Of a stretch of 64,000 nt of DNA, positions 8,330 to 31,045 are shown piece after piece (position 1 is the first letter of the stretch; each line of letters starts with the position of its first letter). The translations under genes were made by a program, and so were the position numbers. The DNA lies in assembly GCA_044892525.1 (NCBI GenBank), contig CM097885.1, positions 104,346,001 through 104,410,000 of the forward strand. The letters run 5' to 3'. Source of the DNA: Schmidtea polychroa (Eukaryota). The notes beneath the pieces were generated by a model. That model searched no databases and was not told the DNA's origin. It saw nothing but the letters and a program-made list of their open reading frames with translations.

Positions 8330-8839
8330 AGTGTTACAAATACCCTTACGATCAGTACCCTTACTATTAATACCCTTACGACTAATACCCTTAGGGGATC
8401 AAAACATCCTGTCGGATAAACTCAGAGTATATATAATAAAATGAATCGACAATAAGTATTTATTGAATACCATTTTTACATTGAAATAATAAGTCAGTAG
8501 TAATCAATTAAAAGAAGAATGTTTTGTAAATTAGAATTCTATAGTCTTTCATTATAATTTAAATTATCCTCAATTCCACGTGGTGTTGAGTTGATAATTA
8601 TTTATTTTTGATGAAAATCATCATTTTTGTTAAATTTAGACACTTAGAAAATGTTTTTCTACTGATTGTAATTAAAATTATTTTTGAGGACAGATAAAAA
8701 AATTAATTTAAAAATCATTTGATAAAATACAATAAAGAATACTTAGTTGGTTGATAGTACATGGTACTTGGTAGCTGGTTGTAAGTACTTGGTATCTAGT
8801 TGTACCTGATAGTTGTTGGTATCTGATTGTTGAATTATT

Positions 8840-13000: not shown

Positions 13001-13761
13001 AGTAGGGTATTGTGTGGAGTCGGGAACAAAGACATATGACGTCATCGATGACGTCACAAAGACATATGAGTCATACCTCCGGGGGAGGGGGGTATTTTTA
13101 TTTTTTTAAACAAAGACATATGACTCATCGTGATGACTCATAATGATGACTCATCGTCGTGACTCATCGTCGTGACTCATCGTGATGACTCATCGTGATG
13201 CCTCGTCGTGATGACTCATCGTCGTGATGACTCATCGTGATGACTCATCAATGTCATATTATTATTTTTAAAAAATATTATTATTTTATTTTTAAATATT
13301 TTCAAAGTTCCCGTCAACGAAAATTATTCATCGATAGCTCATTTTAAAGCTCAATCCAAGAACTTTCGAATGAGCTATTGAAGGTATCATCATCATCATT
13401 AATATTGACAAAGTTATTAACAAATCATGACCACCTTATTTTCATAGTGAAATTATTATTCAAAATATTATTAGTGGTCCAGCGGAGTCCTGGTTTTCGT
13501 TTGCCCAAAAGTTGTCGTTCCAATCATTTTATTTCATTGTTCGATAGCTCATTTTAAAGCTTAGTGCAAGACCTTTCGAATGAGCTATTGAAGGTATCAT
13601 CATCATTAATATTGACAAAGTTATTATCGTTTTCCCGAGACCATTTTCAAGGTCATATAATTATTATTAATCTATATACTCCGAGTCTATCCGACAAAAT
13701 ATTCTGTCCCTCTATTGGTACGGTTCGTAAGGGTACTGGTCACGCTCAACAACTCGCAATG

Positions 13762-13847
<86 letters not shown>

Positions 13848-14096
13848 CTATATACTCCGAGTCTATCCGACAAGATATTTTGTCCCCCTATGGGTACTGT
13901 TTACAAAGGTAAAGGTCACAAATGTACTGCTAAAAAATATTCAAGACATTAACAAAGAAATTATACTTTAAATATATTAACACACTGGGTAAAGGTAACT
14001 AACAAAACTTTAACATATTATTATTACACACACACAATGTATAAAAATTGTTCACAAAGTTAAAAAAAATATTCAAGACAATATGACTAATACATT
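13001..14096 (+). repeat. Left TIR of the Polinton
   Basis: Reverse complement of 28035-29088. Differs mainly in ATT-repeat length and in substitutions within the TGACTCA array; contains internal direct repeats. Confidence 0.95.
13037..13247. promoter_or_regulatory. Array of 10 AP-1 (TGA[C/G]TCA) and 2 CRE/ATF (TGACGTCA) sites in the left TIR
   Basis: CRE at 13037 and 13049; AP-1 at 13067, 13121, 13134, 13147, 13160, 13173, 13186, 13212, 13228 and 13241. Function is inferred. Confidence 0.6.
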
Positions 14097-14453
14097 CAAG
14101 GTCATATAATTATTATTAATCTATATACTCCGAGTCTATCCGACAAAATATTCTGTCCCTCTATGGGTACTGTTCGTAAGGGTACTGGTCACGNNNNNNN
14201 NNNNNNNNNNNNNNNNNNNNNNNNNNNNNNNNNNNNNNNNNNNNNNNNNNNNNNNNNNNNNNNNNNNNNNNNNNNNNNNNNNNNNNNNNNNNNNNNNNNN
14301 NNNNNNNNNNNNNNNNNNNNNNNNCATTATACCAATATGAATATTGTTTTCATGGTGTATCAAATCAAAACTCCTATTTTTATAGTCTATCAACCAATCA
14401 AAATCATATGGTAGTAATATAAATAAAGCAGTATATTTTAAATTAATTTAGAA

Positions 14454-14982
14454 ATGTCGCAACCAAATTTTAGTGAAAATGTTCTAAACGGAATTGTCAC
14501 CGCGAATATAGTCGACAGCCTCAATTTCCTGATCAATCGAACTGAAAAAATCATTGAAGGTGAACATATCGATTATCAGCAAATGATGGAGATAGAATCC
14601 CTGGAAACCAAGAAGTTATACTTCAATAGAATATTTCAGTGTCTTTTCGATGAAGACATGAAATGGACAAGGATAATTGTAGGATTCACCTACATGAAGA
14701 TAATCATTGCAAAAGGTCAACATGACTCAGAACATTATTATCAGTGGTCTTTAGAAGTAAGATTTCTTTTATAATCTATATTTTATTAATATTCATTTCT
14801 AGATAATCAAGTCCAAGTTTACCCCATGGATAGAAGCCAATGGCGGATGGGGTGTATTAAATAAACTGGCCTGCAATTTTAAAGAAACTGATGAAATCAA
14901 AAGAAAAATGAAAAACTATATAAAACTTACAACTGGAGTTGTTATAATGTATATTTTCTGTAGATATATGAATAAAAATTAA
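14454..14982 (+). CDS. Bcl-2 family protein encoded by the Polinton (2 exons: 14454-14756, 14803-14982; 160 aa)
   Basis: BH1-like LFDEDMKWTRIIVGFTY; phase-0 46-nt intron GTAAGA...TTTCTAG; exon 2 gives BH2-like FTPWIEANGGW and a C-terminal hydrophobic anchor with basic tail (LTTGVVIMYIFCRYMNKN). Confidence 0.85.
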
Positions 14983-15027
14983 TGTTATTGTTTTTTAATA
15001 GTATATTTAAATGAAAATAATTCAATT

Positions 15028-15368
15028 TTAAAATTTATTAACACATTCGCAATCGTCATCTCCACATTTCATTATATTTTCAACGACATGATCAATACAA
15101 TCATTCGTAATATTATCTTTAGGTTCCTCTATAGGTTCATAGATTTCTTCATCAATTTCTTGAGTTTCTTCATGATTGTCAAATCCTGAATCTTGACTTT
15201 CAACTACCCAGCCGATATTTAAGGCATTTGTAACAGATAATATGTCCTCAATTTTTACACCAGCTATTTCTGCTAATTTTTCCAACAAAAAGTTGATTAA
15301 TAATTCTAAATAATAAATAATTCGGTATTTAATTAATCATGTTAACCTTTTTCTGTAGTCATTTTCAT
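15028..15368 (-). CDS. Small acidic Polinton protein (exons 15368-15347, 15305-15028; 99 aa)
   Basis: MKMTTEK/ELLINFLLEKLAEIAGV... joined by a 41-nt GT-AG intron (15346-15306); acidic middle, Cys-rich C-terminus (CGDDDCEC). Confidence 0.65.
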
Positions 15369-15495
15369 CACTTTAAAGCTATATTTTAAGTTTGTTTATA
15401 GATTTTCTTTGTTAAATTTGCATGTCATTTGCATTAATGTTGCAATTAATAAAGAGAAAAAACAAATATGACTAATACATTTATTAAATATCACA

Positions 15496-15915
15496 TTAAA
15501 ATAGTTGTGAAAGTCTAGCAGACATAATTTTCCAAATTGGAGAATACACATCATTATTATCAACTTTATATCCTTGGATTGCAATTGTTATATACCAATT
15601 TTCGTTTTCTTTGAAGCTGATTTCATCAAAGGAATCATAAAATCTTGCATATCTGTTGTTGAACCAGGCATGTTGATTACAAGATAGATTCGTATTCAAC
15701 CGTTTGAAAACCTCATCAATAGATTTAACATCTATCGTTGAAAGCGTGCCTGATAAGAATTGAAATTGGGTAGGAATTAGCTTGATCGGTGACGCCAATT
15801 TCATATTGATTTCTTCTTTTAAAAAATACATTTTATAGTTGTGGAACATTTGAACAGGTTGTACAAGTTCTGGAACAACTTTTGGCTTTTCAGTGCTTGA
15901 AATTTTCTTTGTCAT
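15496..15915 (-). CDS. Polinton hypothetical protein, 139 aa (possible OB-fold SSB)
   Basis: Clean ATG ORF with AATAAA at the stop and TATA/CCAAT-like sequence upstream. The C-terminal YITIAIQGYKVDNNDVYSPIWKI pattern recalls viral SSBs (weak). Confidence 0.7.
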   Translation of the reverse strand: MTKKISSTEKPKVVPELVQPVQMFHNYKMYFLKEEINMKLASPIKLIPTQFQFLSGTLSTIDVKSIDEVFKRLNTNLSCNQHAWFNNRYARFYDSFDEISFKENENWYITIAIQGYKVDNNDVYSPIWKIMSARLSQLF

Positions 15916-16188
15916 CGTGAATTATGATTAAAATGAAATGGTACGGGGTTTTTATACCTATGACTATTGTTTATCAACCAATCAGATTGCTGTATGTCTT
16001 TGTTTAAATTTGCATGTCTTTGTTTAAATTGCATGTCATTTGCATTAATGTTGCATTAATGTTTTTTATTATAAATATTGTTTTTTATTATTATTTCTAA
16101 TATTATTATTATTATTACTTATATTATTACTATTATTTCTATTTCTATTATTTCGATTTACAAAAACAAAACAATTCAACATAAAAAT

Positions 16189-16595
16189 TTATTTTGATAC
16201 AATCTGACTCGAGTGATGATTTCTCAGAGTCTTCACCAAACACCATTCAACATATTGTTGATAACGGAAATTGCAACAGCTACATCCGAAAATGCAAGGA
16301 ACCTCTGGTTTCATTTCTTTCATCCCCCTTCCTATCTTGATATCCCATAGAAAGGTGTTTATTATATCGAATATCCAGATTCGTGTTTGGTTGTATACCA
16401 AATCCGGAATGATAGCTGGATCTCTATCTTGTAGAATTTCATTTAATTCTGGATAATAGAAGCATAATCTTTGCAGGATAATTGATTGATACTGATCTGT
16501 AAAATATATATTAATGTAATAATAAAAAATTTGAAATTACCATAATTTGCATGCTCTTTCATTGAGGTGATTGCGGAACTTTGTATGTTGTACAT
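16189..16595 (-). CDS. Polinton Cys-containing hypothetical protein (exons 16595-16541, 16496-16189; 120 aa)
   Basis: MYNIQSSAITSMKEHANY/DQYQSIILQRLCFYYPELNE... joined by a 44-nt GT-AG intron (16540-16497) that puts exon 1 in frame with the track ORF; C-terminal CIFGCSCC cluster. Confidence 0.65.
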
Positions 16596-16716
16596 TTTTG
16601 TTGAATAAATGACAACTAAACCGAAAACATTTTGTTATAAATAATCATCAGCCAATTAGATTTCGACCAATCAGAATCATGCATTTCAATTGCATTGAAT
16701 TTGCAATGATAAATAA

Positions 16717-17181
16717 TTAATTAAGTGATAATAAAAAATCTAAAAATTCATTTCCTTCAATTATTGATTTAATTTCAGATATGATATTATCAACTATACA
16801 TTTGTAATCAATATTTTTTATTCCAAGAATTACTATCTTACCGCTAGCGAATATATTTACACACATAGGGTTATATTTTATATATCTCAAAGCTGGAAAT
16901 AATTCTGGTTCGTAAACACATGGTATTAATTTAGCCAATTCATTTAAATTACAAGAAAAACCTATATCGGAAGTTACGGTTATCGATTGTATTTCTAAAT
17001 CATAAACATTATATTCACTAGCTTTGATTATTTCCTTACACCCTATAATTCTACATTTGCCTGTTTTGAAATATATTATTGGATATTTTTTACTTCTATT
17101 GATGAGTTGTTGTGGTTTCCCCATTGGAAATACCATTTTTGATACATCAGCTTTTGCCCTGTAATTTATATTTGAAAGCAT
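16717..17181 (-). CDS. TATA-box-binding-protein (TBP)-like protein encoded by the Polinton, 154 aa
   Basis: Second TBP repeat clear: IQSITVTSDIGFSCNLNEL...YEPELFPALRY...VNIFASGKIVILGIK. First repeat degenerate: IYFKTGKCRIIGCK. Confidence 0.9.
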   Translation of the reverse strand: MLSNINYRAKADVSKMVFPMGKPQQLINRSKKYPIIYFKTGKCRIIGCKEIIKASEYNVYDLEIQSITVTSDIGFSCNLNELAKLIPCVYEPELFPALRYIKYNPMCVNIFASGKIVILGIKNIDYKCIVDNIISEIKSIIEGNEFLDFLLSLN

Positions 17182-17285
17182 TTTAATGAAATAATTATAA
17201 AAACTCTGTTATATATAGTTATTTTAAAAAGGAGTTCATTTAAATTATCAATATAAACAATAATTATATAGTTTAAATTTAAAAA

Positions 17286-17924
17286 ATGGAATTACGAAAT
17301 GATGCAGTATACCAAATCGTTGGTCCGAGTGGTAGTGGAAAAACATTATTTGTTTGTAAATTACTAAAATCAAATTTGTTCAAAACAAAATTCAACAATA
17401 TTTATTGGCATAGGGGCGCCGATGAAGAACATGGATTGACACAATCAAGTTTCTGTCAATTGAAAAACATGAAAATAGTAAAGGGTTTTGATAAAAACTG
17501 GTCAAGTCGTTTGAAGAAAGATGATGTCATCATTATCGATGATTTGTATCAAGAAGCCAATAAAGAAAAGAATTTTAATAATTTATTCACAAAAATCAGC
17601 AGGCATGCTGGTGTAACAGTTATTTTCATAACACAAAATCTATTTCATCAAGGTGGTGCACATCGAACACGTAATTTAAATGTACAATATCTAGTTATTT
17701 TCAAAAATCCTAGAGATGCAACTGTCATTGATTTTCTTGGACGACAAGCATACCCTAATAACCGTAATTTTCTTATCAATGCATTTCAAGATGCTACAAA
17801 AATACCTCATGGGTATATATTTCTCGATTTCACACAACAATGTCCTGATGATATACGGGTAAAAACAGATATTTTCAACCCAAAAGGTGCCATGGTTTAT
17901 AAACAAAGTTCAAAACAAATTTGA
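17286..17924 (+). CDS. A32/FtsK-like genome packaging ATPase
   Basis: Walker A GPSGSGKT, Walker B IIIDD, ISRH...IFITQNLF...RTRNLNVQYLVIFKNPRD typical of the Polinton ATPase. Confidence 0.95.
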   Translation: MELRNDAVYQIVGPSGSGKTLFVCKLLKSNLFKTKFNNIYWHRGADEEHGLTQSSFCQLKNMKIVKGFDKNWSSRLKKDDVIIIDDLYQEANKEKNFNNLFTKISRHAGVTVIFITQNLFHQGGAHRTRNLNVQYLVIFKNPRDATVIDFLGRQAYPNNRNFLINAFQDATKIPHGYIFLDFTQQCPDDIRVKTDIFNPKGAMVYKQSSKQI

Positions 17925-17937
17925 AAACACATAAATC

Positions 17938-18432
17938 ATGTTTTCAAAAACAAGGATATCGAGTAAAAAACAACCAAAAGTTCCACCAACAACTAGTTAT
18001 ACTCCATCTAAAGAACTTATTACAGAAAATTTTCCTGCAATGAATCTTATTTCGAAAAATCCTAAACCTAAACCTAAAAGTAAAACCACTAAGAAAGTAA
18101 AAGTTGTTAAAAATCATCGGAGTTTCCCGCTTTTCAATACATTGTTAAAGGCACCCAGTATGAAAAGAAACAGTATTTTGCAATCTTTTCCAAATTATGT
18201 TGTCGATGATTTACTCAATATTATACTTAAAGTAGTCAAAGGCAAGATTAAAATCAGTAAATCTAAAAACCAATTATTGAGTAAACATAGGAAACCATTG
18301 TTATCTTTAGTAAATAATAAAAATCGTCAACAAATGAGAAAAATTATATATAAACAACAAGGGGGATTTATCGGTGCATTGATACCTTTAGCAATATCAT
18401 TATTAGGTGGAATAATAGGAAGTCGATCATAA
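17938..18432 (+). CDS. Basic core protein with adenovirus pX(mu)-like C-terminus
   Basis: Very Lys-rich 164 aa ending QQGGFIGALIPLAISLLGGIIGS, resembling the GG-cleavage site plus amphipathic tail of adenoviral pX. Confidence 0.7.
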   Translation: MFSKTRISSKKQPKVPPTTSYTPSKELITENFPAMNLISKNPKPKPKSKTTKKVKVVKNHRSFPLFNTLLKAPSMKRNSILQSFPNYVVDDLLNIILKVVKGKIKISKSKNQLLSKHRKPLLSLVNNKNRQQMRKIIYKQQGGFIGALIPLAISLLGGIIGSRS

Positions 18433-18493
18433 ACAATGGGTGCTAATCCTTCATTACCAGACATTAAATTTAATTTTAAATCTTCTTGTTGTA

Positions 18494-19675
18494 ATGGAGA
18501 AGATTTGGACGAACCCAGAAGACGAAGCCGGTTTCGGTGGAGTGGCAAAATTAAACAAAAGAGTTCCGAATTCGAAAAAGGAAACCCAGAAGTGGTTATC
18601 AGACCAGCTTGCGTACAGTTTGAACAAACCAATGCAGAAACGATTCCCAACAAGAGTATATAAAACATATGGAATAAATGATTTATGGCAAATGGATTTG
18701 ATGGAGATGATACCTTATTCGAAAATTAACAATGAGAATAAATATATTTTAACATGTATTGATGTATTCAATCGGTTTGCCCGAGCAATACCCGTCAAGG
18801 CAAAATCTGCAGATGAAATGTCTAAAGCAATTAATATTTTATTTAAAGATGGGCATCCTAATANNNNNNNNNNNNNNNNNNNNNNNNNNNNNNNNNNNNN
18901 NNNNNNNNNNNNNNNNNNNNNNNNNNNNNNNNNNNNNNNNNNNNNNNNNNNNNNNNNNNNNNNNNNNNNNNNNNNNNNNNNNNNNNNNNNNNNNNNNNNN
19001 NNNNNNNNNNNNNNNNNNNNNNNNNNNNNNNNNNNNNNNNNNNNNNNNNNNNNNNNNNNNNNNNACAGTAAAGTCAAGCAAATCCTCAATAAATTAAAAA
19101 TAAACCATTACTCGGTACATTCTCAATACAAAGCTGCTCATGTTGAAAGATTTAACAGAACATTGAGAGATAGATTAAAGAAATTATTCGTGCATCAAGG
19201 TAATAAAAAATGGGTAAATGCTTTACCGAAAATAATAACAAGTTATAATCATTCATCACATCGAGGACTGGATGGATTGAGACCGGTTGATATTACATCA
19301 AAAACACCAGTATCTAAGAAATCTGTAAAAATTGCAAAACCTAAATATAAAGTCGGTGACCATGTTAGAATTAGTAAAATTAGTGCATCACCATTTATTA
19401 AAAATTTCGATACAAATTGGAGTGACGAAGTCTTTGTAATTTCAAAAATAAATACTAGCCAGAGTCCTGTAATGTATGTCATCAAAGACAATGATAATAA
19501 TATTGTACAAGGGAAATTTTATGAGCAGGAATTACAAGTCATTCCTCCTCCAAAAGTATTTAGAATTCAAAAGATATTGAAAACTAAAAAGGTCGGCAAG
19601 GATAAACAATACTATGTCAAATGGCATGGTTATCAAAACCCGTCATGGATATCAGAAAAGGATCTACTAAAGTGA
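18494..19675 (+). CDS. Retroviral-type (rve) integrase with C-terminal chromodomain
   Basis: WQMDLMEM, LTCIDVFNRFA, HVERFNRTLR, YNHSSHRGL, KVGDHVRI, chromodomain IQKILKTK...YYVKWHGY..PSWI. The second catalytic Asp falls in the N-gap 18864-19064. Confidence 0.93.
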   Translation: MEKIWTNPEDEAGFGGVAKLNKRVPNSKKETQKWLSDQLAYSLNKPMQKRFPTRVYKTYGINDLWQMDLMEMIPYSKINNENKYILTCIDVFNRFARAIPVKAKSADEMSKAINILFKDGHPNXXXXXXXXXXXXXXXXXXXXXXXXXXXXXXXXXXXXXXXXXXXXXXXXXXXXXXXXXXXXXXXXXXXXSKVKQILNKLKINHYSVHSQYKAAHVERFNRTLRDRLKKLFVHQGNKKWVNALPKIITSYNHSSHRGLDGLRPVDITSKTPVSKKSVKIAKPKYKVGDHVRISKISASPFIKNFDTNWSDEVFVISKINTSQSPVMYVIKDNDNNIVQGKFYEQELQVIPPPKVFRIQKILKTKKVGKDKQYYVKWHGYQNPSWISEKDLLK

Positions 19676-20687
19676 ATTTTTATACTATTTTACCGAGCAA
19701 TAGTTGCCCATTAATTCATCCAGACAATCAAGCCAGTAAATTTATGGTCAATCTCCAGAATCCGATTTCTTTAAATGGTGACTGGGAAGTTGCACTGCAA
19801 GATTTTACATTCGTGTACAACACATTCCCATTTTATAGTCAATGTAAGATTGATTTCAAAAGGAATATTGTGAAAACATGTAGCGGTATCTTTATTATCA
19901 GTAATTATGATAAAACATATCGTATTCCGAATCAAATATTAGATTCACATTGCTATATGTTTTACAAGGATGGATTAAATATCAGTTGTGATTTTAAACC
20001 ATTTACAATAACATTCGAATATATTGAAGATGCCAAACGAATGGGTTGCAGTAAGTTGAAAAATATTGTTACGGAGACCGAGTATTTATTACGTTTTAAT
20101 CTATTTGAAGCAAACAGTGTAATGAAAGAAGAAATCAAAATATCTGTATCGTATAATGATGAAGTTGAAGAATCATTTACCTTTGCTGATGAATTATATT
20201 TTGATAAACTTGATGATTTACTTAAATATTTAAAGTTCAATTGTTCACACATATTTAAAAATTTGGAAATTGTGAAAGATTTGATGTTTACCTTCAGTTT
20301 GAATGATGATATTTGTGAAGTTACATTTGAAAAAATTTGGCAAATTCGCTTGGATTAGATAAGCAAAAATATCGAGAAAAATCGACTGGTATACGCAAAC
20401 CAAGAATACTAGAACATCATCAACAAATGTTCATATATATAAATATTATCGAACCCATAATTGTTGGTGATTCCAGTGTTCCTCTATTGAAATCGGTATG
20501 GATTGGAAAATATGAACATGATGAAGTTGTCAATATAAATATAGATAATCCCATGTATTTACCAATAGCAAGTTCATGTATAAACAATATAGAAATAAAT
20601 ATTCGTGATGATAGTGGAAAACTTATAAACTTTCCAAAAGACTCAAAAACTCATTTGACACTACATTTTCGTAAAGTAGATGGCTAA
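19645..20687 (+). pseudogene. Minor capsid protein (penton), frameshifted near 20330-20340
   Basis: N-terminal FYTILPSNS..HPDNQASKF.V.L...I.L.GDWEVAL; C-terminal MFIYINIIEPIIVGDSSVPLL...LHFRK. Adding one A to the A6 run joins the two ORFs (FEKNLANSLGL). Confidence 0.85.
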
Positions 20688-21042
20688 TTCCGATATTATT
20701 AGTATGTATAGTGATAGCCAATCTGGCGGTGAATTACCATATTTTATTGGTAAACAGTACGGATCAGGTTGGTTAAAAACAATAGGGAGATTTGCACTTC
20801 CTATTCTTAAACGTATTGGTAGTTTTGGCATGAAAACTGCTAAAGACGTGATTATGAATGAACAGAAAATATTACCATCCCTAAAAACAAATGCTTTAGC
20901 TGAGTTAGGGAAGGTTCTACCTGGAGTTGCTGGTATGTTTCAAAAAGATACGCCTCCAGCCCCAGCTCAAAAACGTAAAAGACATGGAATATCGCGTATA
21001 AACAAACGAATGAAAGGACATGGAACTATATTTGCAAAATGA
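20680..21042 (+). CDS. Small virion protein with QxGG/QxGxG motifs and amphipathic helix (pVI/core-like)
   Basis: SQSGGELPYFIGKQYGSGWLKTIGRFALPILKRIG, basic C-terminus; lies just upstream of the major capsid gene. Confidence 0.75.
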   Translation: MANSDIISMYSDSQSGGELPYFIGKQYGSGWLKTIGRFALPILKRIGSFGMKTAKDVIMNEQKILPSLKTNALAELGKVLPGVAGMFQKDTPPAPAQKRKRHGISRINKRMKGHGTIFAK

Positions 21043-22223
21043 TTTGTGGTAAATCCGAATTATGTATATTTGATAGACCATCGCCTCAAGCTGTAATAGA
21101 ATTTGGTGCATTTGAGGAAGTTTTTCCTATGAATTCAATTACTGATAGTAGAAATGATATCGAGTTTTATATTAATGGTTCGCAAACTGAATATTTAGAT
21201 TTGAACGATACTTTATTGACTGTTCAGATCAAGGTTGTAGATAAAGAAAGAAAAGTTTTGGATGCCAATGCAGATGTAATACCGAACAATTTCATGTTTC
21301 ATACTCTGTTTAAAGATGCAGTGTTGGGATTTAATAATATCAAGATTGAAGGCATTAATAGAAACTATTTTAAATTACAATTCTGATACTAAAAATACAT
21401 GTCTTACACCTATGGGTTATGGCAGTGATGATGAAAGAAAAAAGTGGGTTAAAGGCTCAAAGGTTTTCACCATGTGCTCATCATTACAACTTGATTTTAT
21501 GGATCAACCGAAATATTTACTACCGGGAGTTAATGTACACATTAGACTGAAAAGGTTCGATTCTGCATTATCTCTTACTAGTGCAACTGGTGCACCAATA
21601 TGCCAATTAGTTGATGCAAAATTATTGGTGAGAAGAGTTCGAGTAGACCCGTCAGTATTAGCTGGTCATCAATTGGGGCTTAATTCAAAACATGCAATTT
21701 ATCCTTTAAAAACAAAGGAAATTGTACAATTTGCTATTGCTAAAGGTGCTTCATCATTCTATAAAGAACAAATATTTGGTGACAGAAGAATGCCTAATTT
21801 TATTCTGGTAACATTTCAAAGTGAAACGCAATATAATGGATCTTCCAGCTCAATTTTCAAAATTTTGGTGTTACTTCATTGACTTTGTCGAAAAATACTG
21901 ATTATAGAGAAACATATACTCAAGATTTCGAAAGCGATAATTACTGTGCGACATATATGCAGAGTATTGTTAGAAATCTGGGTTACTTAGATAAAAACTT
22001 GAATTGTGGAATAACTCTAGAAGATTTTAAAAGCAAATACCCATTTTTCACATTTGTTTTAGCCCCTGATTTTGATTTAAATCAGAGTCAACTACCTCAA
22101 AATGGAAATTTACGACTGGATATTAAGTTTGCAAGAGCCATTACTGAACCGGTACATGTTATAATATATGGAGTATTTGAAAATGAAGTTCAAATTACTG
22201 CAAATAGAACCGTGCTAGTATAA
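21039..22223 (+). pseudogene. Major capsid protein (double jelly-roll), broken into three ORFs
   Basis: KSELCIFDRPSPQAVIE...IEFYINGSQTEYLDLNDT; ALIETILNY; LQLDFMDQPKYLLPGVNVHIRL; RMPNFILVTF; GNLRLDIKFA. Frame breaks near 21350 and 21850. Confidence 0.9.
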
Positions 22224-22635
22224 ATGTATACAGAAACACAAAACGTTGTCATGGAGTAAGTTTTTTGATACTGTTTAATTTTATTAAAGTAGTTCTGTTC
22301 AGGTTAATCGAATTGGAAAACAGATATTAGGAAATGAATTTATAGGTGTTTTTCCTCTTGATAAAATTCCTTATTTGAGCAATAATCAAGCTATAATCGT
22401 CAATACTCATTCATCTCATCTTGGTGGAGAACATTGGATAGCTATATATGTGAAACCTAGTAATATATTCGTATTCGATCCTATGGGTTTCTATTATCCT
22501 TCTTTGTTGATATCAAAACTTCAAACAATTGGGAAACCTATTGTATATAATAAAACTATGTTTCAAAATCCATTGACTCAAACATGTGGTCAACACTGTT
22601 TGGCATGGTTGTTGTATACAAAATTTGATGGTTAA
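22224..22635 (+). CDS. Adenain-like cysteine protease, spliced (exon 1 22224/22251-22255, exon 2 22293-22635)
   Basis: Removing the 37-nt intron GTAAG...GTAG gives MDSVQVNRIGKQILGNEFIGVFPLDKIP. Catalytic GEHW, FDPMG and QTCGQHC are present. Confidence 0.88.
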
Positions 22636-23072
22636 TAAATGTATACTGTATGATTTTTATTTGTTGACTATTTTAATTATTTGTTAAATATTATTATTAT
22701 TATTAATATTATTATTATTAATATTATTAATATTATTATTATTTTGAAAAAATATTATTATTTTAATTAATTTTATTATTCAAATAAATATTATTAATTC
22801 TACATAAAGACTACCTATGCCTGAAGCATGCACAGTGCAAGTTAACAAAGGCATGACTAACAAAGGCAGTCACATGTAATTTTTGAGTGATTTACATGTA
22901 TGCGTGTGATTGGTTGAGAGAGTAAAATATTCAGTGTATATGTGTGTGTCTATATTCTCATTGGCTGGGACAGGAAAATATTCATTCTCTTTATAAACAT
23001 CGACAAATCTAAAATTTGTCACAATTATTTTAAAATTTTAAAAATCTATTAATAATAATAATATTTAACAAC

Positions 23073-23337
23073 ATGAACAACAACAATATTCAAAGAGTTG
23101 ACGGAAAGATCGTTGGAGGAATTAATGGTAAATTTATTATTTTATTATTTTATTATTTTTAATATGATTATTAGGTACTAATCAACAAATGAATATCGAC
23201 GGACAAGCTGTAGACATGAATAGAATAAATGGTAATAGTTTACTATTATAATCATTATTATTTTATTATGCTTTTAGATGGAATAAATACTTCTGCTGGT
23301 TCTGATGCTGGAAAATTTCTTTCGAAAGGACGAAAAT
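23073..23337 (+). CDS. Micro-exon gene inside the Polinton (23073-23127, 23175-23231, 23278-23337, then an open donor)
   Basis: Three phase-1 exons of 55, 57 and 60 nt separated by 47- and 46-nt GT-AG introns read MNNNNIQRVDGKIVGGINGTNQQMNIDGQAVDMNRINDGINTSAGSDAGKFLSKGRK. GTAAGT donor at 23338; next exon not identified. Confidence 0.65.
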
Positions 23338-23380
23338 GTAAGTATTTATTTATTGTTATAAGTTTTTAAGTTTTTTAAAC

Positions 23381-23461
<81 letters not shown>

Positions 23462-23477
23462 TAAAAGAAGATTATAA

Positions 23478-23720
23478 AGAAACTTATGAAAAGAAGATAT
23501 TTTAAAAGAAGATTTATTTATGATGATTTTGAAAGGAATATTTATGAAAAGAAGATTTATTCATGAAAAGAAGATTTATTTATGATGATTTTGAAAAGAA
23601 GATTCATGAAAAGAAGATTTATTTATGATGATGATTTTGAAAAGAAGATTTATTCATGAAAAGAAGATTTATTTATGATGATTTTGAAAAGATGATTTAT
23701 TAAATATGATGATTTTGAAT
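23478..23720. repeat. Degenerate tandem repeat (gaaaagaagatttatt/tatgatgatttt units)
   Basis: About 8 imperfect copies upstream of PolB. Confidence 0.8.
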
Positions 23721-23981
23721 ATTATAATTAATAACTTTTATATATTATTTATGAAAATAAAATCTATTTTAGAAAATGAATTATTTATTTATGAAAATGA
23801 ATTAAATTATTTATGAAAACGAATTAAATTATATATTTTATAATAATTTTTATAGTATTTTTTTATAAGATACTATTTAAAAGACAATTTTGAATAATAT
23901 CTTACGAAAAATATCTTAAACTTTAAAAATGATTATCTTAATATTTTTTAAACATTTTATGATAAAAATATTTTCATTGGT

Positions 23982-26900
23982 TTGAAATACCAAAACTTTT
24001 GTAATAGTCAATATCATAATGACGGCGATGATATAATGGAAAGATATTATAGTCATAAATATAACGGTGTCACCTACATTCTATGCCCTAAATGTGAGGT
24101 TATTGAAGTTATAACGTATAAGGAATTTTATAATAAGCATAGACTCCATCTCCAACAATTTAAACCTTCTAAGAAGTCTCTTTTCTATAGCTTATATGAA
24201 TCGTTTGTTAACAATAATAATAATAATAATAATAATAATATCACCAGCAACAATAATATCAACAATAATGATAATAATATCACCAGCAACAATAATATCA
24301 ACAATAATGATAATAATAATATCACCAACAATAATACTAACAACACCAATAATAATGATATAAACGAAATAACTGAACTAAAAGATCAAGTAAATAAATT
24401 AAATGATCAAATAAATAATCTAATTAATATGAATAAAAGAAAAAATAATGAAAAAATAAATTCAATACCAAGTAAAAAATCTAAAGTTATTGATGTAATT
24501 ACAATAAGTGATGATGAAATAATCAACATAAGTGATGATGAAATTGATAATAATAGTAGTAGTAATATTTATTATAATAATGGTATTAATAATAATATTA
24601 ATCAAATAGGTTATGGTGTCGTAGATGTCACCAGTGATTTAAATAATAATCATATTATATTAAAAATGGACGTTTCGTCTTTAGATTTAAAAACGGTCTC
24701 TGTACCAGACATTTTAATAAATAAATTAAAATTATATGTAAATAAATTAAAATCATGTAAAATTCAATTTTGTCTAAAGGTGGAATTTATAAAAGATGAT
24801 GAGTTACAATCTTTTGTAATCTCGAATTCCGCCCGAGTTTGGAGCGATACATTCATTGACGAAGGTATTGCTCGTTTAAATGAAAAAATAATTAAAATTA
24901 ATGAGAAAGGTAGTAATTGGACTATCAATAAAATAGAATACATAAGCTTTGTTCTTACTAAATTTGCTGAAATAAGTCGGTTAAGTGGTAGAAGTTTTAT
25001 TGAAACCCCAAAATCTTTAAGAAACTTAAGCTGTCTCGTTAATGTAGTTAATAATGACCACTTCTGTTTTTTGTATAGTTTCTTGTCAATTATTAAATAT
25101 GATAGTATAAATAGGCAATATAGAAATCGCCCTAATTCATACAATCTTTCTGAAATTAAATTTGATCCTAATGATATGCCGATGAAACTATCAAATATAA
25201 GTAAATTTGAACAACAAAATCCAGGTTATAGTATAAATGTTCTTACTTATAACGAAAAGGCTTTGATTGACATTTCCGATGAAGATGCAGTTATGAAACA
25301 TCCCTTTATTGATATAATATACAGGAGTAAGATAGTAGGAGCCATACCTATCAATTTATTATTAATTGAAAAGAATGATAATTATCATTATCTTGGAATC
25401 ATAGACCTAAATAGATTCCTTAATTGTAGGAATAGTTCAATCACTCCTGTTAGGATTTGTAGTCAATGGTGCCCTAGATGTTTAAACGGTTTTAGGAATG
25501 ATGACGCTTTTAATAGACATAAGGGTCTTTACGATAAAAATCAGCTTGGTACTACCTTGTACACATTGCCTAAAAATAAATATTTAGAATTTACTGATTG
25601 GAGTAAAACAGTCACTCCTCCCTTTGTTATTTACGCTGACTTTGAGGCTATCTTACCTAAAGACACTCGCTACTTTCAACGTCATCTGCCTATTTCTGCC
25701 GGTATGCTTTTTATTAATAATTTCTCGGGCGTAAAGATTTATAAGTCGTTCACCGGTTTAGATTGTGTCGATCAATTTCTTACTGAAATTGAAATGATAG
25801 GGAAATATATTGTAACTCCTTATTATTATAAAAATTATCAAAAGAAAATGATAATTACAGATGAGCAGGAATTAATGTTTGAAAACAGCACATCATGCTA
25901 TTTGTGCAATAAGCCTTTAGTTAGTCCAGTTAGGGACTATGATCATTTTACCGGTTTATATCTCGGTGCCGCTTGTACAACTTGTAATCTGTCGAGGCAA
26001 ATTAGACATACCCTTCCTGTAGTATTTCATAATTTAAAGGGTTATGATCTGCATCATATCTTGAAATTTGGCCTTTCAAAATATCATTCATGGAATATTA
26101 GTTGTATTCCTTTAACCAGCGAGAAATTCCTTAGTCTTTTTGCTAGGATTGACTCATTAACTGTTAAATTTATAGACTCTTATCAATTTGTCAGCGAGTC
26201 TTTAAATAATGCTGTCAAAACTTTATCATCTTTACCCTTGACCGAATCAGAATTTCAGGGTACAATAATAACTGCAAAAGGAATTATTCCTTATGATGCC
26301 GCAACTTCATTAGAGGTTTTGCATAACACTCATCAGTTACCTCCTATTTGGAAAGATGTGACTCCCGCTGAATATGAGACAGCTCAGAGAATTTGGCTTG
26401 AAACTTCATGTACTTCACTTTTTGATTACACGATGGTTTATTTAAAACTTGATGTTTTCCTTTTAGCCGATTTTTTCCAGCAATTTAGAGCTAAGTCCAT
26501 TGCTCATAACCGACTAGAGCCATTAAATTTCTTAGGGATTCCAGGTATGTCTTGGAATTCAGCCTTATTAACTTTAAACTCTCCAATTGAGCTCCTCACC
26601 GATATGGAGATGTATAACTTTTTCGAGGGCGGTATCCGTGGCGGACTAACTTTTGTAAATAAACATTATGTAAAAACAGACCCGGATACCGCTTTGCTTT
26701 ACATAGATATAAATAATTTATACGGTTGGGCTTTAAGTCAACCATTACCTTGCAGTGACTTTGAATGGGTTACTGATGATAATTTATTAAATAATATAAT
26801 TGTTGAATGCACAACGGTAGATTTAGATCTGCTTGATTATGGTTATACCATAGAAGTGGATTTAGAAATACCGACGTCAATTCACGACAAACTGGACGAT

Positions 26901-28014
26901 CTTCCCGTTGCCGCTGAAAAGATGTGTGTACCGGGTTCGAAAATAGAGAAGCTGTTGCTTACACACAGCCCCAAGAGGAACTACGTTCTTCATTGGAGGC
27001 TTCTACAAATATTTATTAAATTAGGTGTTAAAATATTAAAAACACATAGAGCAATAATTTAAACAAGATAAAATTTTCAAAAATTATATTAACACAAATA
27101 CGGCGTTACGAGCAGCGTCGACAAATAAACTTTATAAATTATTAAACAACAGTCTTTACGGCAAGACTGTTGAAAATCTTAAAAAACGTATTAATTTACG
27201 TCTGTGTAATTCTTCACAGAGATTATTAACATTCTGTTCGAAACCGACTTTTCGTAAATCCACGAAAATCGATGATGACTTGATTTCGGTTTTATTGAGG
27301 AAGGACATAGTGTGTTTGAATAGACCTAGTTACATTGGTCAAGCCGTACTTGATTTATCCAAACTTCGCATGTACCAGCTGCAGTATGAAGAGTTGCAAA
27401 AATATCGCGACGAATTCAACTGCGAAATTAATATCGTTGCTGGAGACACAGATTCCTTCTTCTTGGAAATTAAACATTGTAGTCTTGACATTCTTTTACC
27501 TGCGATGATTAGAGATCAATTATTAGATACTTCGAATTATGACCCAAATCATCCTTTATATAGTAGGAACCTTGATTCTGTTATTGGTAAATTCAAAGAC
27601 GAGAATAAAGGGTTATTATATAAAGATTGGGTGTTCTTGAGACCTAAATGTTACAGTTTGATGGGTGATGAGGAAAGTATGAAGGCTAAGGGGATAAGTA
27701 TGAAAGATACTGGACTAACACCCCAGTCGTATCTAGATTGCTATTTAAATGATAAAATATACACAGTCCCTCAGTTTAGAATAACGTCAAAAAATCACCA
27801 ACTTTTTAGTATTAAAAATAATAAAAGAGCCTTGACATGTAGAGATGATAAGCGAAATTGGGTGGATAAAAATCAAAGTTTGGCATATGGCCATTATAGG
27901 GGCGGTGACACCGTTATATTTATAGATTCAACGGAAGCTATCTCAACAGATGATACAGATGATTTCCATGATCCAGCATATGATAATTATTTTGGACATG
28001 ATTATTTTCGATGA
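23982..28014 (+). pseudogene. Protein-primed family B DNA polymerase, frameshifted at ~27057
   Basis: Exo motifs VIYADFE, FHNLKGYD, YLKLDV; Pol motifs LYIDINNLYGWA, KLLNNSLYGK, GDTDS; endonuclease-VII-like Zn domain CYLC...DYDHFTG...ACTTCN. ORF 23982-27062 continues in another frame that is open from 27058 to 28014. Confidence 0.95.
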
Positions 28015-28034
28015 TGTGTTTAAATTATTTAATA

Positions 28035-28283
28035 AATGTATTAGTCATATTGTCTTGAATATTTTTTTTAACTTTGTGAACAATTTTTATACATTGTGTG
28101 TGTGTAATAATAATATGTTAAAGTTTTGTTAGTTACCTTTACCCAGTGTGTTAATATATTTAAAGTATAATTTCTTTGTTAATGTCTTGAATATTTTTTA
28201 GCAGTACATTTGTGACCTTTACCTTTGTGAACAGTACCCATAGGGGGACAAAATATCTTGTCGGATAGACTCGGAGTATATAG

Positions 28284-28327
<44 letters not shown>

Positions 28328-29088
28328 CATTGCGAGTTGTTGAGCGTGACCAGTACCCTTACGAACCGTACCAATAGAGGGACAGAATATTTTGTCGGAT
28401 AGACTCGGAGTATATAGATTAATAATAATTATATGACCTTGAAAATGGTCTCGGGAAAACGATAATAACTTTGTCAATATTAATGATGATGATACCTTCA
28501 ATAGCTCATTCGAAAGGTCTTGCACTAAGCTTTAAAATGAGCTATCGAACAATGAAATAAAATGATTGGAACGACAACTTTTGGGCAAACGAAAACCAGG
28601 ACTCCGCTGGACCACTAATAATATTTTGAATAATAATTTCACTATGAAAATAAGGTGGTCATGATTTGTTAATAACTTTGTCAATATTAATGATGATGAT
28701 GATACCTTCAATAGCTCATTCGAAAGTTCTTGGATTGAGCTTTAAAATGAGCTATCGATGAATAATTTTCGTTGACGGGAACTTTGAAAATATTTAAAAA
28801 TAAAATAATAATATTTTTTAAAAATAATAATATGACATTGATGAGTCATCACGATGAGTCATCACGACGATGAGTCATCACGATGAATCACCACGATGAG
28901 TCACTGCGATGGGTCATCACAATGGGTCACGACGATGAGTCATCATGATGAGTCATCACGATGAGTCATATGTCTTTGTTTAAAAAATAAAAATACCCCC
29001 TCCCCCCGGGGGGTATGACTCATATGTCTTTGTGACGCCATCGATGACGTCATATGTCTTTGTTCCCGACTCCACACAATACCCTACT
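28035..29088 (-). repeat. Right TIR of the Polinton
   Basis: Inverted copy of 13001-14096. Confidence 0.95.
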
Positions 29089-29094
29089 GGGCGT

Positions 29095-30803: not shown

Positions 30804-31045
30804 AGTTATAGTATAGTACTATTCGGTAGTATTAGTCATAATTGATTTATCATAATTTTAAATAATTTGATTTTTAAACCGAAAAGTTGACAAAATTATT
30901 TTTAAATAATATTTAATTAAAATAAATATATTTGTTTTAATATGCAAAATTATAATTTTATATAGTATTTATTTCAAACTTAAATTTAATAAATTTGTTG
31001 ATATTTAAAAAAATTTTTTGGTTATTAATAATATTTTTAAATAAC

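What the first reader, a model, noticed from the sequence alone, without database searches (positions are those of the whole stretch)
13001..17181. Polinton with a host-control 'early' cassette: Bcl-2, TBP and spliced orphans beside a stress-element-rich TIR
Seen: between the left TIR and the virion/replication block sit five non-core genes. They are a Bcl-2 homologue, an acidic protein, a putative SSB, a Cys-cluster protein and a TBP homologue, and three are spliced. Established: the core Polinton set is PolB, integrase, ATPase, protease and capsids; adenoviruses put anti-apoptotic (E1B-19K) and transcription-modulating genes at the left end. Inference: this is an endogenous virus with its own apoptosis-blocking and basal-transcription module. 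I do not know of this combination being described in a flatworm Polinton.
Basis: partly seen in the sequence, partly recalled or inferred. Interest (0 to 1): 0.92.

Follow-up and report, generated by a model that had tools for sequence, protein, structure and literature searches.

The report
Polinton with TBP and Bcl-2 genes
A 16-kb virus-like transposon (Polinton/Maverick) sits in this animal genome and carries, beside its virus genes, its own small TATA-binding protein, a Bcl-2-type cell-death regulator and three small genes; the TBP gene and one neighbour are conserved in many related elements, and this copy has broken capsid and polymerase genes.

Summary
Window 13001-29088 is one integrated Polinton/Maverick: 6-bp target duplication GGGCGT and 1.1-1.2 kb inverted ends that are 97-100% alike. 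Between the left end and the packaging-ATPase gene lie five small genes, three of them with 41-46 nt GT-AG introns. The N gap (14194-14324) lies in non-coding DNA at the inner edge of the left repeat; no cassette gene crosses it.

- **TBP homologue:** secure (Pfam 55 bits; model pLDDT 95; top 44 fold matches all TBP). It is compact, with a shortened first repeat.
- **Bcl-2 homologue:** supported, mostly through relatives.
- **"SSB":** a conserved family with an OB-like predicted fold; ssDNA binding is unproven.
- **Acidic and Cys genes:** orphans. The Cys gene is missing from a ~98%-identical sister copy.

The cassette is not one unit. The TBP-like and SSB-like genes are neighbours in 21 of 27 informative related loci. 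Bcl-2 occurs in three sub-lineages only; other relatives carry RING, E2 or phosphatase genes. This copy has four frameshifts in three core genes.

Bcl-2 in adintoviruses and TBP in related viruses are already published, so this is a new variant of a known kind. Interest is moderate.

The parts
13001..29088 (.). Whole integrated Polinton/Maverick element (16,088 bp as assembled, with two N gaps)
   Evidence: TIRs, identical 6-bp flanks, collinear with relatives L001/L003/L009/L012
12995..13000 (.). Left copy of the 6-bp target-site duplication, GGGCGT
29089..29094 (.). Right copy of the 6-bp target-site duplication, GGGCGT
13001..14193 (.). Left terminal inverted repeat, up to the gap. It contains sub-repeats and a (TAT)27 run.
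28035..29088 (.). Right terminal inverted repeat
13037..13247 (.). Array of CRE-like (TGACGTCA x2) and AP-1-like (TGACTCA/TGAGTCA x10) sites with a 13-nt tandem unit. Mirrored at about 28842-29052.
14194..14324 (.). Assembly gap (131 N) at the inner edge of the left TIR. Non-coding context; not filled.
14454..14982 (+). Bcl-2-family gene, 160 aa: exon 1 14454-14756, intron 14757-14802, exon 2 14803-14982. It has a BH1-like WTRI, a BH2-like WIEANGGW and a hydrophobic C-terminal tail.
15028..15368 (-). Acidic orphan gene, 99 aa, pI 4.05: exon 1 15347-15368, intron 15306-15346, exon 2 15028-15305
15496..15915 (-). Beta-rich, OB-like predicted fold. It is the partner gene of the TBP-like gene in relatives.
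16189..16595 (-). Cys-containing orphan gene, 120 aa by model: exon 1 16541-16595, intron 16497-16540, exon 2 16189-16496. The splice model is ambiguous. The gene is absent from sister copy L002.
16717..17181 (-). Compact TBP homologue, 154 aa
17286..17924 (+). Packaging ATPase (Pox_A32 / FtsK-HerA type), intact
17938..18432 (+). 164-aa gene. Its C-terminal ~100 aa are conserved in relatives. Function unknown.
18440..19675 (+). rve-type integrase with a chromodomain-like C-terminus. Interrupted by the assembly gap 18864-19064, so integrity is unknown.
19621..20687 (+). Virion-module gene homologous to the ~330-345 aa genes of relatives. Broken: 1 frameshift, no stops in the aligned parts.
20680..21042 (+). 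120-aa conserved virion-module gene, intact
21039..22223 (+). Homologue of the highly conserved 409-aa gene (candidate major capsid protein by position only). Broken: 2 frameshifts, no stops in the aligned parts.
22291..22635 (+). Adenain-like (Peptidase_C5) gene, 114 aa. Only the N-terminal part of the family profile is matched, as in relatives.
22657..23836 (.). AT-rich tandem-repeat DNA, at the place where relatives carry a conserved 104-159 aa gene
23982..28014 (+). Protein-primed-type DNA polymerase B gene. Broken: 1 frameshift in the C-terminal third; the long N-terminal part is open.

Best explanation
Window 13001-29088 is a recently integrated Polinton/Maverick of an adintovirus-like lineage. 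The span 14454-17181 is its left accessory region, and it is layered rather than one cassette.

**Layers**
1. An old, widely conserved gene pair: a compact TBP homologue and a ~110-140 aa beta-rich, OB-like protein.
2. A Bcl-2-family gene found in three sub-lineages, at varying positions.
3. Two young orphans (acidic and Cys-containing) that come and go between close copies.

**Shown**
- Gene content, introns and the conservation pattern.
- Purifying selection on the Bcl-2-like and OB-like genes.
- The TBP fold.

**Inferred mechanism**
- Each gene is a separate RNA polymerase II unit. CCAAT-type (TGATTGG) sites lie upstream of three genes and ATGCAAAT octamers upstream of two; by my own reading, TATA-like elements lie a few tens of nt before each ATG. 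Three genes carry small host-type introns, so they would be expressed in the nucleus by the host machinery.
- The TBP-like protein keeps the strand-turn-strand DNA-binding core and the paired phenylalanines, but lacks the helices of the first repeat. It probably binds TATA-like DNA in the element's own promoters, with different partners than host TBP.
- The OB-like partner probably coats single-stranded DNA displaced during protein-primed replication by the element's polymerase.
- The tail-anchored Bcl-2-like protein probably delays mitochondrial apoptosis of the cell.

As assembled, this copy carries four frameshifts in three core genes, so it is probably not autonomous.
For: **Element identity**
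- TIRs and target duplication.
- Pox_A32 ATPase 30.4 bits, above its cut-off of 22.8; Peptidase_C5 28.7 bits, above 21.3; rve and Chromo hits.
- Polymerase matched by relatives' PF03175-bearing genes at 55-63% identity.
- Gene order is collinear with four relatives.

**TBP-like protein**
- Pfam TBP 55.4 bits against a cut-off of 22.9.
- Archaeal TBP in the PDB at E = 1.4e-17, with both Phe of the second repeat aligned to Phe.
- 94 homologues of about 150 aa, with F38, F95 and F111 invariant and F18 nearly so.
- AF2 model pLDDT 95.4. The top 44 Foldseek hits are all TBP, with TM 0.6-0.72 over both repeats.
- The first half aligns to the second half at E = 2.9e-5, with F38 on F111.

**OB-like partner**
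- 43 representative clusters in 1.84 billion proteins.
- It lies within 800 nt of the TBP-like gene in 21 of 27 loci that have room on both sides, in three orientations.
- Model pLDDT 91.7.
- The best PDB matches are the phage Enc34 SSB (probability 0.85-0.89), then RPA, other SSBs and the ASFV ssDNA-binding protein, all weak.
- 19 giant-virus proteins match at E below 1e-3.

**Bcl-2-like protein**
- All nine PDB sequence matches of exon 1 (E up to 10) are Bcl-2 A1 or Bak; the best is E = 0.028.
- The joined 160-aa product aligns end to end with L012's 161-aa protein (E = 1e-8).
- L012's protein passes the Pfam Bcl-2 cut-off and hits Bcl-xL at 6e-6.
- BH1/BH2-like motifs and a hydrophobic tail are present.
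- The intron is shared by diverged copies.

**Selection:** dN/dS is 0.14-0.16 for Bcl-2 exon 1 and 0.11 for the OB-like gene.

**Turnover**
- The Cys gene is absent in L002.
- RING, E2 and phosphatase genes occur in relatives.
- No Bcl-2 was found in L001, L009 or the JGI loci.

**Promoter motifs:**

**Breaks:**
Against: - No expression data of any kind were available. Promoters, transcription direction, timing and splicing are read from sequence only.
- DNA binding by the TBP-like protein is untested, and its first repeat is much reduced.
- The OB/SSB assignment is below significance in the PDB (E >= 0.1). Sequence profiles hit nothing. The significant fold matches are to uncharacterised giant-virus proteins.
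- The window's Bcl-2 exon 1 alone is below the Pfam cut-off (17.9 against 31.4 bits), and exon 2 alone hits nothing. No structure was predicted for it.
- The 409-aa and ~340-aa 'capsid' genes have no sequence match to any solved structure or Pfam family. The virion module is therefore assigned by position only.
- The polymerase ORFs themselves hit no Pfam family or PDB entry.
- The host is not identified by my tools.
Confidence: 0.75

Rival explanations
1. One reading: the five genes form one coherent 'early' host-control module, analogous to the adenovirus left end. It would block apoptosis and take over basal transcription.
For: All five genes lie together at one end, outside the virion and replication block. 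They are mostly transcribed away from it and have their own promoters. Bcl-2 and TBP genes are direct neighbours in the L003- and L012-type relatives. Other relatives carry RING, E2 and phosphatase genes in the same region, which fits a host-interaction zone.
Against: Conservation is uneven: only the TBP-like + OB-like pair is general. The Cys gene is a presence/absence variant between ~98%-identical copies. The OB-like gene looks more like a replication factor than a host-control gene. Nothing tests timing. The acidic gene lacks the LxCxE/CxxC signature of the published 'Oncoid' genes.
Confidence: 0.25
2. The TBP-like protein and its OB-like neighbour are a replication pair, not a transcription factor plus SSB. 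The TBP fold would bind and bend AT-rich terminal or origin DNA to help start protein-primed synthesis, and the OB-like protein would hold the displaced strand.
For: The two genes are tightly linked in three orientations across many lineages, as expected for partners in one process. The first TBP repeat has lost its helices. By general knowledge of TBP, those helices carry many contacts with transcription partners.
Against: The family matches bona fide TBP at sequence level, far above the family cut-off. No TBP-family protein is known to me to act in replication initiation. TATA-like elements precede the element's own genes.
Confidence: 0.2
3. The genes are passenger host genes or pseudogenes picked up once by this copy, with no role for the element.
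For: Three genes have host-type introns. The acidic and Cys genes have no distant homologues.
Against: TBP-like, OB-like and Bcl-2 genes recur in independent related elements. dN/dS is 0.11-0.16. The TBP-like protein is closer to archaeal and microsporidian TBPs than to animal TBPs in the PDB ranking, which argues against a recent capture from the host.
Confidence: 0.04
4. The copy, or its cassette, has been taken over by the host: the cassette genes stay intact while the capsid and polymerase genes decay.
For: All five cassette genes are open, while three core genes carry four frameshifts.
Against: At the core genes' break density (4 per roughly 8.8 kb), about 0.9 breaks are expected in the 2 kb of cassette coding sequence. 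Zero breaks is therefore unremarkable (my estimate). The TIRs are 97-100% alike, so the insertion is young.
Confidence: 0.03

Closest known systems
Adintoviruses / animal Polintons with accessory anti-apoptotic genes (Starrett et al. 2021, PMC8502044)
   Same: PolB, rve integrase with chromodomain, FtsK/HerA-type ATPase, adenain, inverted ends. The paper states that adintovirus homologues of Bcl2 and IAP were observed.
   Different: No flatworm element is mentioned there. The polymerase here shows no Pfam match of any kind, including OTU. Its capsid-module genes could not be compared with adintovirus hexon. A conserved TBP-like + OB-like gene pair is not described in the text.
MELD viruses annotated with 'TBP' (figure legends of Starrett et al. 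2020/2021)
   Same: A TBP homologue encoded by a midsize linear dsDNA virus-like genome with adintovirus-like genes.
   Different: It appears only as a label in figure legends for viruses from non-animal datasets, with no analysis of structure, distribution or linkage. I could not see which genomes carry it.
Accessory regions of vertebrate Mavericks (Barreat and Katzourakis 2021, PMC8097293)
   Same: Accessory regions flank the core modules next to the TIRs. Element size is about 16 kb with TIRs of hundreds of bp. Terminal motifs are of the (AGT)2//(ACT)2 kind; here the termini are AGTAGG//CCTACT.
   Different: Gene order and accessory content differ. A search of that paper for 'Bcl' and 'TATA' found neither term.
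Cellular and archaeal TATA-binding protein
   Same: Pfam TBP is well above its cut-off. The predicted saddle matches both repeats. Phenylalanines of the DNA-binding sheet are conserved.
   Different: 154 aa instead of about 180 for the core. The first repeat lacks its long helix and keeps only a 4-residue helix. There is no N-terminal extension.
Adenovirus E1B-19K and DNA-binding protein; TBP-like proteins of giant viruses and African swine fever virus (my own knowledge, not retrieved by any search here)
   Same: The functional analogy is a DNA virus carrying its own apoptosis blocker, ssDNA-binding protein or TBP-like factor.
   Different: No tool returned E1B-19K, adenovirus DBP or a viral TBP as a hit. 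The ASFV ssDNA-binding protein CP312R and a baculovirus DNA-binding protein appear only as weak fold matches of the OB-like gene.

Membership tests
Polinton/Maverick | Long terminal inverted repeats | tested here: met
   About 1.1-1.2 kb, 97-100% alike
Polinton/Maverick | 6-bp target-site duplication | tested here: met
   GGGCGT on both sides
Polinton/Maverick | Protein-primed family B DNA polymerase | tested here: met
   There is no direct Pfam or PDB hit. Relatives' PF03175-bearing polymerases match 26049-27912 at 55-63% identity. The gene carries one frameshift.
Polinton/Maverick | Retrovirus-like (rve) integrase | tested here: met
   rve 24.5 bits, below the cut-off of 32.6. The gene is 71% identical to a relative's integrase that carries PF00665. 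The ORF is crossed by an assembly gap.
Polinton/Maverick | FtsK/HerA-type packaging ATPase | tested here: met
   Pox_A32 30.4 bits, above the cut-off of 22.8
Polinton/Maverick | Adenain-like cysteine protease | tested here: inconclusive
   Peptidase_C5 28.7 bits, above the cut-off of 21.3, but only profile positions 2-57 of 179 are matched, here and in a relative. The part holding the catalytic cysteine was not found.
Polinton/Maverick | Double and single jelly-roll capsid proteins | tested here: inconclusive
   The conserved 409-aa and ~340-aa genes lie in the expected place. They have no Pfam or PDB sequence match.
Adintoviridae (as defined in 10.1101/2024.03.25.586562) | [quoted passage not shown] | tested here: inconclusive
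   No OTU family was reported by Pfam for the 1026-aa ORF at E <= 0.1. A remote similarity is not excluded.
Adintoviridae | Integrase with a C-terminal chromodomain | tested here: inconclusive
   Chromo 21.4 bits, E = 2.4e-4, below the cut-off of 25.1, at residues 375-410. 'Faint' Chromo hits are recorded in relatives.
Adintoviridae | Hexon recognisable by BLASTp against reference adintoviruses | not testable with these tools
   No adintovirus reference sequence was returned by any search, and none may be typed or fetched.
TBP family | Match to the TBP repeat profile | tested here: met
   Pfam PF00352 55.4 bits against 22.9. 35 PDB TBPs, best at 1.4e-17.
TBP family | Two tandem repeats forming a saddle | tested here: met
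   AF2 pLDDT 95.4. Foldseek aligns 164-184 columns to whole TBPs. The internal repeat is detected at E = 2.9e-5. The first repeat is shortened.
TBP family | Binding and bending of TATA DNA | not testable with these tools
   Only conservation of four Phe in the sheet is seen.
Bcl-2 family | Match to the Bcl-2 domain profile (BH1-BH2 region) | tested here: inconclusive
   Window exon 1 scores 17.9 bits against a cut-off of 31.4, and exon 2 alone hits nothing. The homologues in L003 and L012 score 40.2 and 32.8 bits, above the cut-off. The window protein aligns to L012's over 144 residues at E = 1e-8.
Bcl-2 family | Helical bundle fold with a BH3-binding groove | not tested
OB-fold ssDNA-binding proteins | OB-fold similar to known SSBs | tested here: inconclusive
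   Top PDB fold hits are the phage Enc34 SSB (E = 0.11, probability 0.89, TM 0.44), then RPA, other SSBs and ASFV CP312R, all at E >= 0.1. Profile searches found nothing.
Adintovirus 'Oncoid' genes (PMC8502044) | LxCxE motif next to paired CxxC | tested here: not met
   None of the five proteins has LxCxE. The only CxxC is a single CSCC in the Cys protein.

The most novel reading that the evidence does not exclude
The compact TBP homologue and its OB-like neighbour are the hallmark of a so-far undescribed clade of Polinton/adintovirus-like elements, seen here in 71 loci from many independent assemblies. These elements would carry their own basal promoter-recognition factor for use in the host nucleus. 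One branch, which includes this window's element and the L003 and L012 types, added a Bcl-2-family gene. That would make this clade small nuclear DNA virus-like elements with a self-encoded TBP.
Probability: 0.35. Interest if true: 0.65.

Novelty: new variant of a known kind. Interest (0 to 1): 0.5.

Why it matters
Polintons/Mavericks are usually described by their core genes, and their accessory regions are poorly charted.

- A virus-like element that brings its own TBP would not depend fully on the host's promoter-recognition machinery. This one is highly conserved, structurally confident and stripped-down. Its tight pairing with a conserved OB-like gene gives a concrete marker for finding the clade in other genomes.
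- The Bcl-2 gene, the spliceosomal introns and the gain and loss of small genes between near-identical copies show how such elements sample host-interaction genes.
- For the host, this is a young insertion of a family whose genes were under selection until recently. That bears on whether such elements still circulate as viruses.

Tried and rejected
**Searches that found nothing**
- Exact-product look-ups of the window's TBP-like and Piwi proteins: not on record. The host could therefore not be named.
- PHROGs on seven element proteins: nothing.
- PDB sequence searches with the two polymerase pieces, the OB-like profile and the 409-aa profile: nothing useful.
- IMG/VR scan with the TBP-like profile: one distant locus only.
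- No TGACTCA array in the fetched parts of relatives.

**Ideas rejected**
- *The Cys protein is a decayed TBP repeat.* The profile score is only 4.1 bits.
- *The acidic protein is an 'Oncoid'.* It has no LxCxE.
- *ATGCAAAT is enriched in the window.* It is not: 13 found against 9.5 expected. It is only locally clustered in two cassette promoters.
- *The frameshifts are homopolymer read errors.* The longest runs at the junction zones are 3-6 bases, so this is not evident.
- *The frame changes in core genes are introns.* The flanking pieces abut with only -1 to 7 residues of the relatives unaccounted for.

**Not done**
- The joined Bcl-2-like product was not sent to Pfam, PDB or structure tools. 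It has no reference and I did not type it.

1. Residue statements rest.
2. In one search I joined the two Cys-gene exons in a script on my own reading of GT...AG, before any support existed. The later enumeration shows that the model is ambiguous. Only negative results came from that join.

Full report
**1. What is in the window**

The window is AT-rich (about 18-35% G+C per 2-kb block). A pair of long inverted repeats bounds 13001-29088. Arms 13001-13803 and 28286-29088 are 97% complementary, and arms 13805-14096 and 28035-28326 are 100% complementary. The six bases outside each end are the same, GGGCGT, and the ends read AGTAGG...CCTACT. Long TIRs, a 6-bp target duplication and AG-type termini are the signature of a Polinton/Maverick insertion. 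The terminal motif resembles the (AGT)2//(ACT)2 motif reported for vertebrate Mavericks (PMC8097293). The near-identity of the arms indicates a young insertion.

**2. The gap**

The N run 14194-14324 begins where the left arm stops matching the right arm. It ends 130 nt before the first cassette ATG at 14454.
- The ORFs that cross it are mechanical, made of X.
- No protein of a related element matches its flanks.
- Frame and continuity across the gap therefore do not bear on any of the five genes.
- Two things stay unknown: whether the left arm and the cassette are truly adjacent, and whether sequence is missing.
- A second gap, 18864-19064, lies inside the integrase ORF. The "411-aa ORF" reads X through it.

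**3. Core genes**

| Gene | Coordinates | Evidence |
|---|---|---|
| Packaging ATPase | 17286-17924 | Pox_A32 30.4 bits, cut-off 22.8 |
| Integrase | 18440-19675 | rve 24.5 bits (below cut-off) and a chromodomain-like C-terminus, 21.4 bits |
| Adenain-like protease | 22291-22635 | Peptidase_C5 28.7 bits, cut-off 21.3 |
| DNA polymerase B | 23982-28014 | No Pfam or PDB hit of its own. Matched at 55-63% identity by polymerases of relatives that carry PF03175 |

Between the integrase and the protease lie homologues of three conserved genes of the relatives: about 340 aa, 114-120 aa and 409 aa. By position these would be capsid-module genes.

Break counts against intact relatives:
- The ~340-aa gene has one frameshift.
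- The 409-aa gene has two frameshifts.
- The polymerase has one frameshift.
- No stop codons occur in the aligned parts.
- The ATPase, the 120-aa gene and the 164-aa gene are open.
- The integrase cannot be judged because of the gap.

The frame changes are abrupt, with only -1 to 7 residues of the relatives unaccounted for. They do not sit in long homopolymers. They are therefore small indels, real or assembly-made, and not introns.

**4. The five genes**

- **(a) Bcl-2-like, 14454-14982 (+).**
  - Every PDB sequence match of exon 1 (101 codons) is a Bcl-2 A1 or Bak chain; the best is E = 0.028, with the query's WTRI aligned to the WGRI of the BH1 motif.
  - Pfam Bcl-2 gives 17.9 bits, below its cut-off.
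  - Exon 2 carries WIEANGGW and a hydrophobic C-terminal tail.
  - The 46-nt GT-AG intron is shared at the same place by two diverged copies from other assemblies, L016 and L017. Their intron lengths are 44 and 38 nt, and the exons stay in frame.
  - The joined 160-aa product aligns from residue 7 to 150 with the intron-less 161-aa gene of relative L012 (E = 1e-8).
  - L012's protein passes the Pfam Bcl-2 cut-off (32.8 bits; L003's scores 40.2) and hits Bcl-xL at 6e-6.
- **(b) Acidic gene, 15028-15368 (-).**
  - 99 aa, pI 4.05, 41-nt intron.
  - It is present with the same intron in L018/L019. All indels in its acidic repeats there are multiples of three.
  - It has no distant homologues.
- **(c) The 139-aa gene, 15496-15915 (-).** See section 6.
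- **(d) Cys gene, 16189-16595 (-).**
  - 120 aa by a 44-nt intron model, but a second solution of equal length exists.
  - It has no homologues.
  - It is absent from L002. That copy is about 98% identical over the ATPase start and the TBP-like gene, then runs straight into the promoter of gene (c).
- **(e) TBP-like gene, 16717-17181 (-).** See section 5.

TGATTGG (CCAAT-type) sites lie upstream of the Bcl-2-like, 139-aa and Cys genes. ATGCAAAT octamers lie upstream of the acidic and 139-aa genes. These motifs are conserved in L018/L019. By my own reading, a TATA-like element also lies a few tens of nt before each ATG.

**5. The TBP homologue**

- Pfam TBP scores 55.4 bits against a cut-off of 22.9.
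- 35 PDB TBPs match, the best being *Methanococcus jannaschii* TBP at 1.4e-17. In that alignment the two phenylalanines of the second repeat fall on phenylalanines.
- The large protein collection holds 94 homologues of about 145-160 aa, with 35-58% identity for most.
- In an alignment of 43 of them, F38, F95 and F111 are invariant and F18 nearly so.
- The AlphaFold model built on that alignment has mean pLDDT 95.4. Its 44 best PDB matches are all TBPs, aligned over both repeats with TM 0.6-0.72.
- The first repeat is reduced. It has four strands and only a 4-residue helix, where the second repeat has five strands and two helices.
- A profile of the first half aligns to the second half (E = 2.9e-5), putting F38 on F111.
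- In the PDB ranking, archaeal and microsporidian TBPs come before plant, yeast and human ones. This does not look like a recent copy of an animal TBP.

**6. The "SSB"**

- A full scan of 1.84 billion representatives found 43 clusters of small proteins.
- The model has pLDDT 91.7 and is mostly beta strands with one helix.
- In the PDB the best matches are the ssDNA-binding protein of phage Enc34 (E = 0.11, probability 0.85-0.89, TM 0.44). Next come Tetrahymena p19, RPA subunits, bacterial and mitochondrial SSBs and the ASFV ssDNA-binding protein CP312R. All are below significance.
- Among predicted viral structures, 19 giant-virus proteins match at E below 1e-3. All are uncharacterised. A baculovirus DNA-binding protein appears further down the list.
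- Sequence profiles find nothing.
- I rate "OB-like nucleic-acid binder, probably ssDNA" at about 0.55. If true, it is a replication gene, in line with strand-displacement synthesis by a protein-primed polymerase. That last step is inference from established knowledge of such polymerases.

**7. Relatives**

Through the TBP-like protein I fetched 75 loci from independent assemblies.
- L001, L003, L009 and L012 are collinear with the window's element. Protein identities are ATPase 70-75%, integrase 58-71%, the 409-aa gene 53-62% and TBP-like 47-53%.
- In L003-L008 and L012-L015 a Bcl-2 gene lies directly beside the TBP-like gene, between it and the divergently transcribed ATPase gene.
- In the window the Bcl-2 gene lies instead at the far end next to the TIR. 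It points inward, has an intron, and is only 25-28% identical to those genes. This could mean relocation with fast change, or separate acquisitions.
- An ORF of the 139-aa family lies within 800 nt of the TBP-like gene in 33 of 71 loci. Among loci with at least 700 nt on both sides the count is 21 of 27. Three arrangements occur.
- Several loci are the same element from different samples, so the number of independent lineages is smaller than these counts.
- No Bcl-2 gene was found in L001, L009 or the JGI loci, either with a local profile or in a Pfam scan of 46 neighbouring ORFs. That scan found a dual-specificity phosphatase, a ubiquitin-conjugating enzyme and a RING finger. L012 also has a RING gene at the distal position.
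- Between diverged copies, dN/dS is 0.14-0.16 for Bcl-2 exon 1 and 0.11 for the 139-aa gene.

**8. Reading**

The region is the accessory end of a Maverick, an architecture already described for vertebrate Mavericks.
- It combines an old, linked TBP-like/OB-like pair with a changing set of host-interaction genes.
- The proposed functions in promoter recognition, ssDNA coating and apoptosis delay are inferences from family membership and fold. Nothing here shows expression.
- Intact cassette genes next to four frameshifts in the core genes is not evidence of selective retention. At the core's break density about 0.9 breaks would be expected in 2 kb of cassette coding sequence.

**9. Literature**

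- Starrett et al. (PMC8502044) report Bcl2 and IAP homologues in adintoviruses. They label TBP homologues in figure legends of related midsize viruses.
- A later survey notes anti-apoptotic genes in mammal-associated adintoviruses.
- A Dugesia genome preprint reports expansion of Maverick elements in planarians, without gene content.
- I found no paper linking TBP, Bcl-2 and flatworm Polintons. The library searched is not the whole literature.

**10. Limits and slips**

- The host is not identified by my tools.
- The joined Bcl-2-like product could not be sent to the structure or family tools.
- The slips are listed under "tried and rejected". They are motif strings recalled from memory during reasoning, a premature exon join for the Cys gene, and a profile line printed by HMMER.

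Noticed in passing
window 18864-19064: A second assembly gap (201 N) lies inside the integrase ORF. The listed 411-aa ORF reads X through it. The relatives' integrase is almost fully accounted for by the two flanks, so the stated gap length is probably not the true one.
   Followed up: partly
L002:790-1176 versus window 16000-16716: A ~98%-identical sister copy lacks the Cys-containing gene and its promoter (about 650 bp). There the TBP-like gene is followed directly by the 139-aa gene, as in the distant relatives.
   Followed up: yes
L016:1-500 versus window 14440-14990: Bcl-2-like exon 2 is almost identical between L016 and the window. Exon 1 is only 63% identical at protein level (dS about 1.6). 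This suggests recombination between lineages near the intron.
   Followed up: partly
L003:3961-6985; L012:2707-5741; window 19621-20687: Relatives carry three tandem paralogues of a ~330-345 aa virion-module gene. The window's element has one.
   Followed up: no
window 22657-23836: About 1.2 kb of AT-rich tandem repeats fills the place where L001, L003, L009 and L012 carry a conserved 104-159 aa gene after the adenain-like gene. No homologue of that gene is detectable in the window.
   Followed up: partly
window 22291-22635 and L003:2013-2333: The adenain-like gene is only about 107-114 aa in the window and in all four relatives. It matches only the first third of the Peptidase_C5 profile. Where the catalytic cysteine part lies is unexplained.
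   Followed up: partly
window 39187-41655 (-): An uninterrupted 822-aa ORF with PAZ and Piwi domains (Piwi 214 bits) lies 10 kb from the element. This is a host Argonaute/Piwi-family gene without introns in this stretch.
   Followed up: no
window 30995-31753; 52559-55304: Host-type coding pieces lie outside the element: a G-patch/DUF4187 ORF and CPSF73-like Beta-Casp/RMMBL exons.
   Followed up: no
window 51404-51917: Seven TGATTGG(Y) sites on one strand within about 500 bp, apparently a repeat array unrelated to the element.
   Followed up: no
window 8371-8439: A 69-bp stretch outside the element is 75-78% similar to a sub-repeat of the TIR (13667-13735, 14116-14184).
   Followed up: no
L012:10662-11075; JGI loci L021-L059: Relatives carry other accessory genes near the TBP-like gene: a RING finger (zf-C3HC4_3), a dual-specificity phosphatase and a ubiquitin-conjugating enzyme.
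   Followed up: partly
L003-L008 (ENA ERZ227xxxx series): Nearly the same ~16-kb element is the second or third largest contig, at 6-7x coverage, in at least six separate small assemblies; the six contigs are 13.7-16.3 kb. L012/L013 reach 37x. I could not see what the samples are.
   Followed up: no
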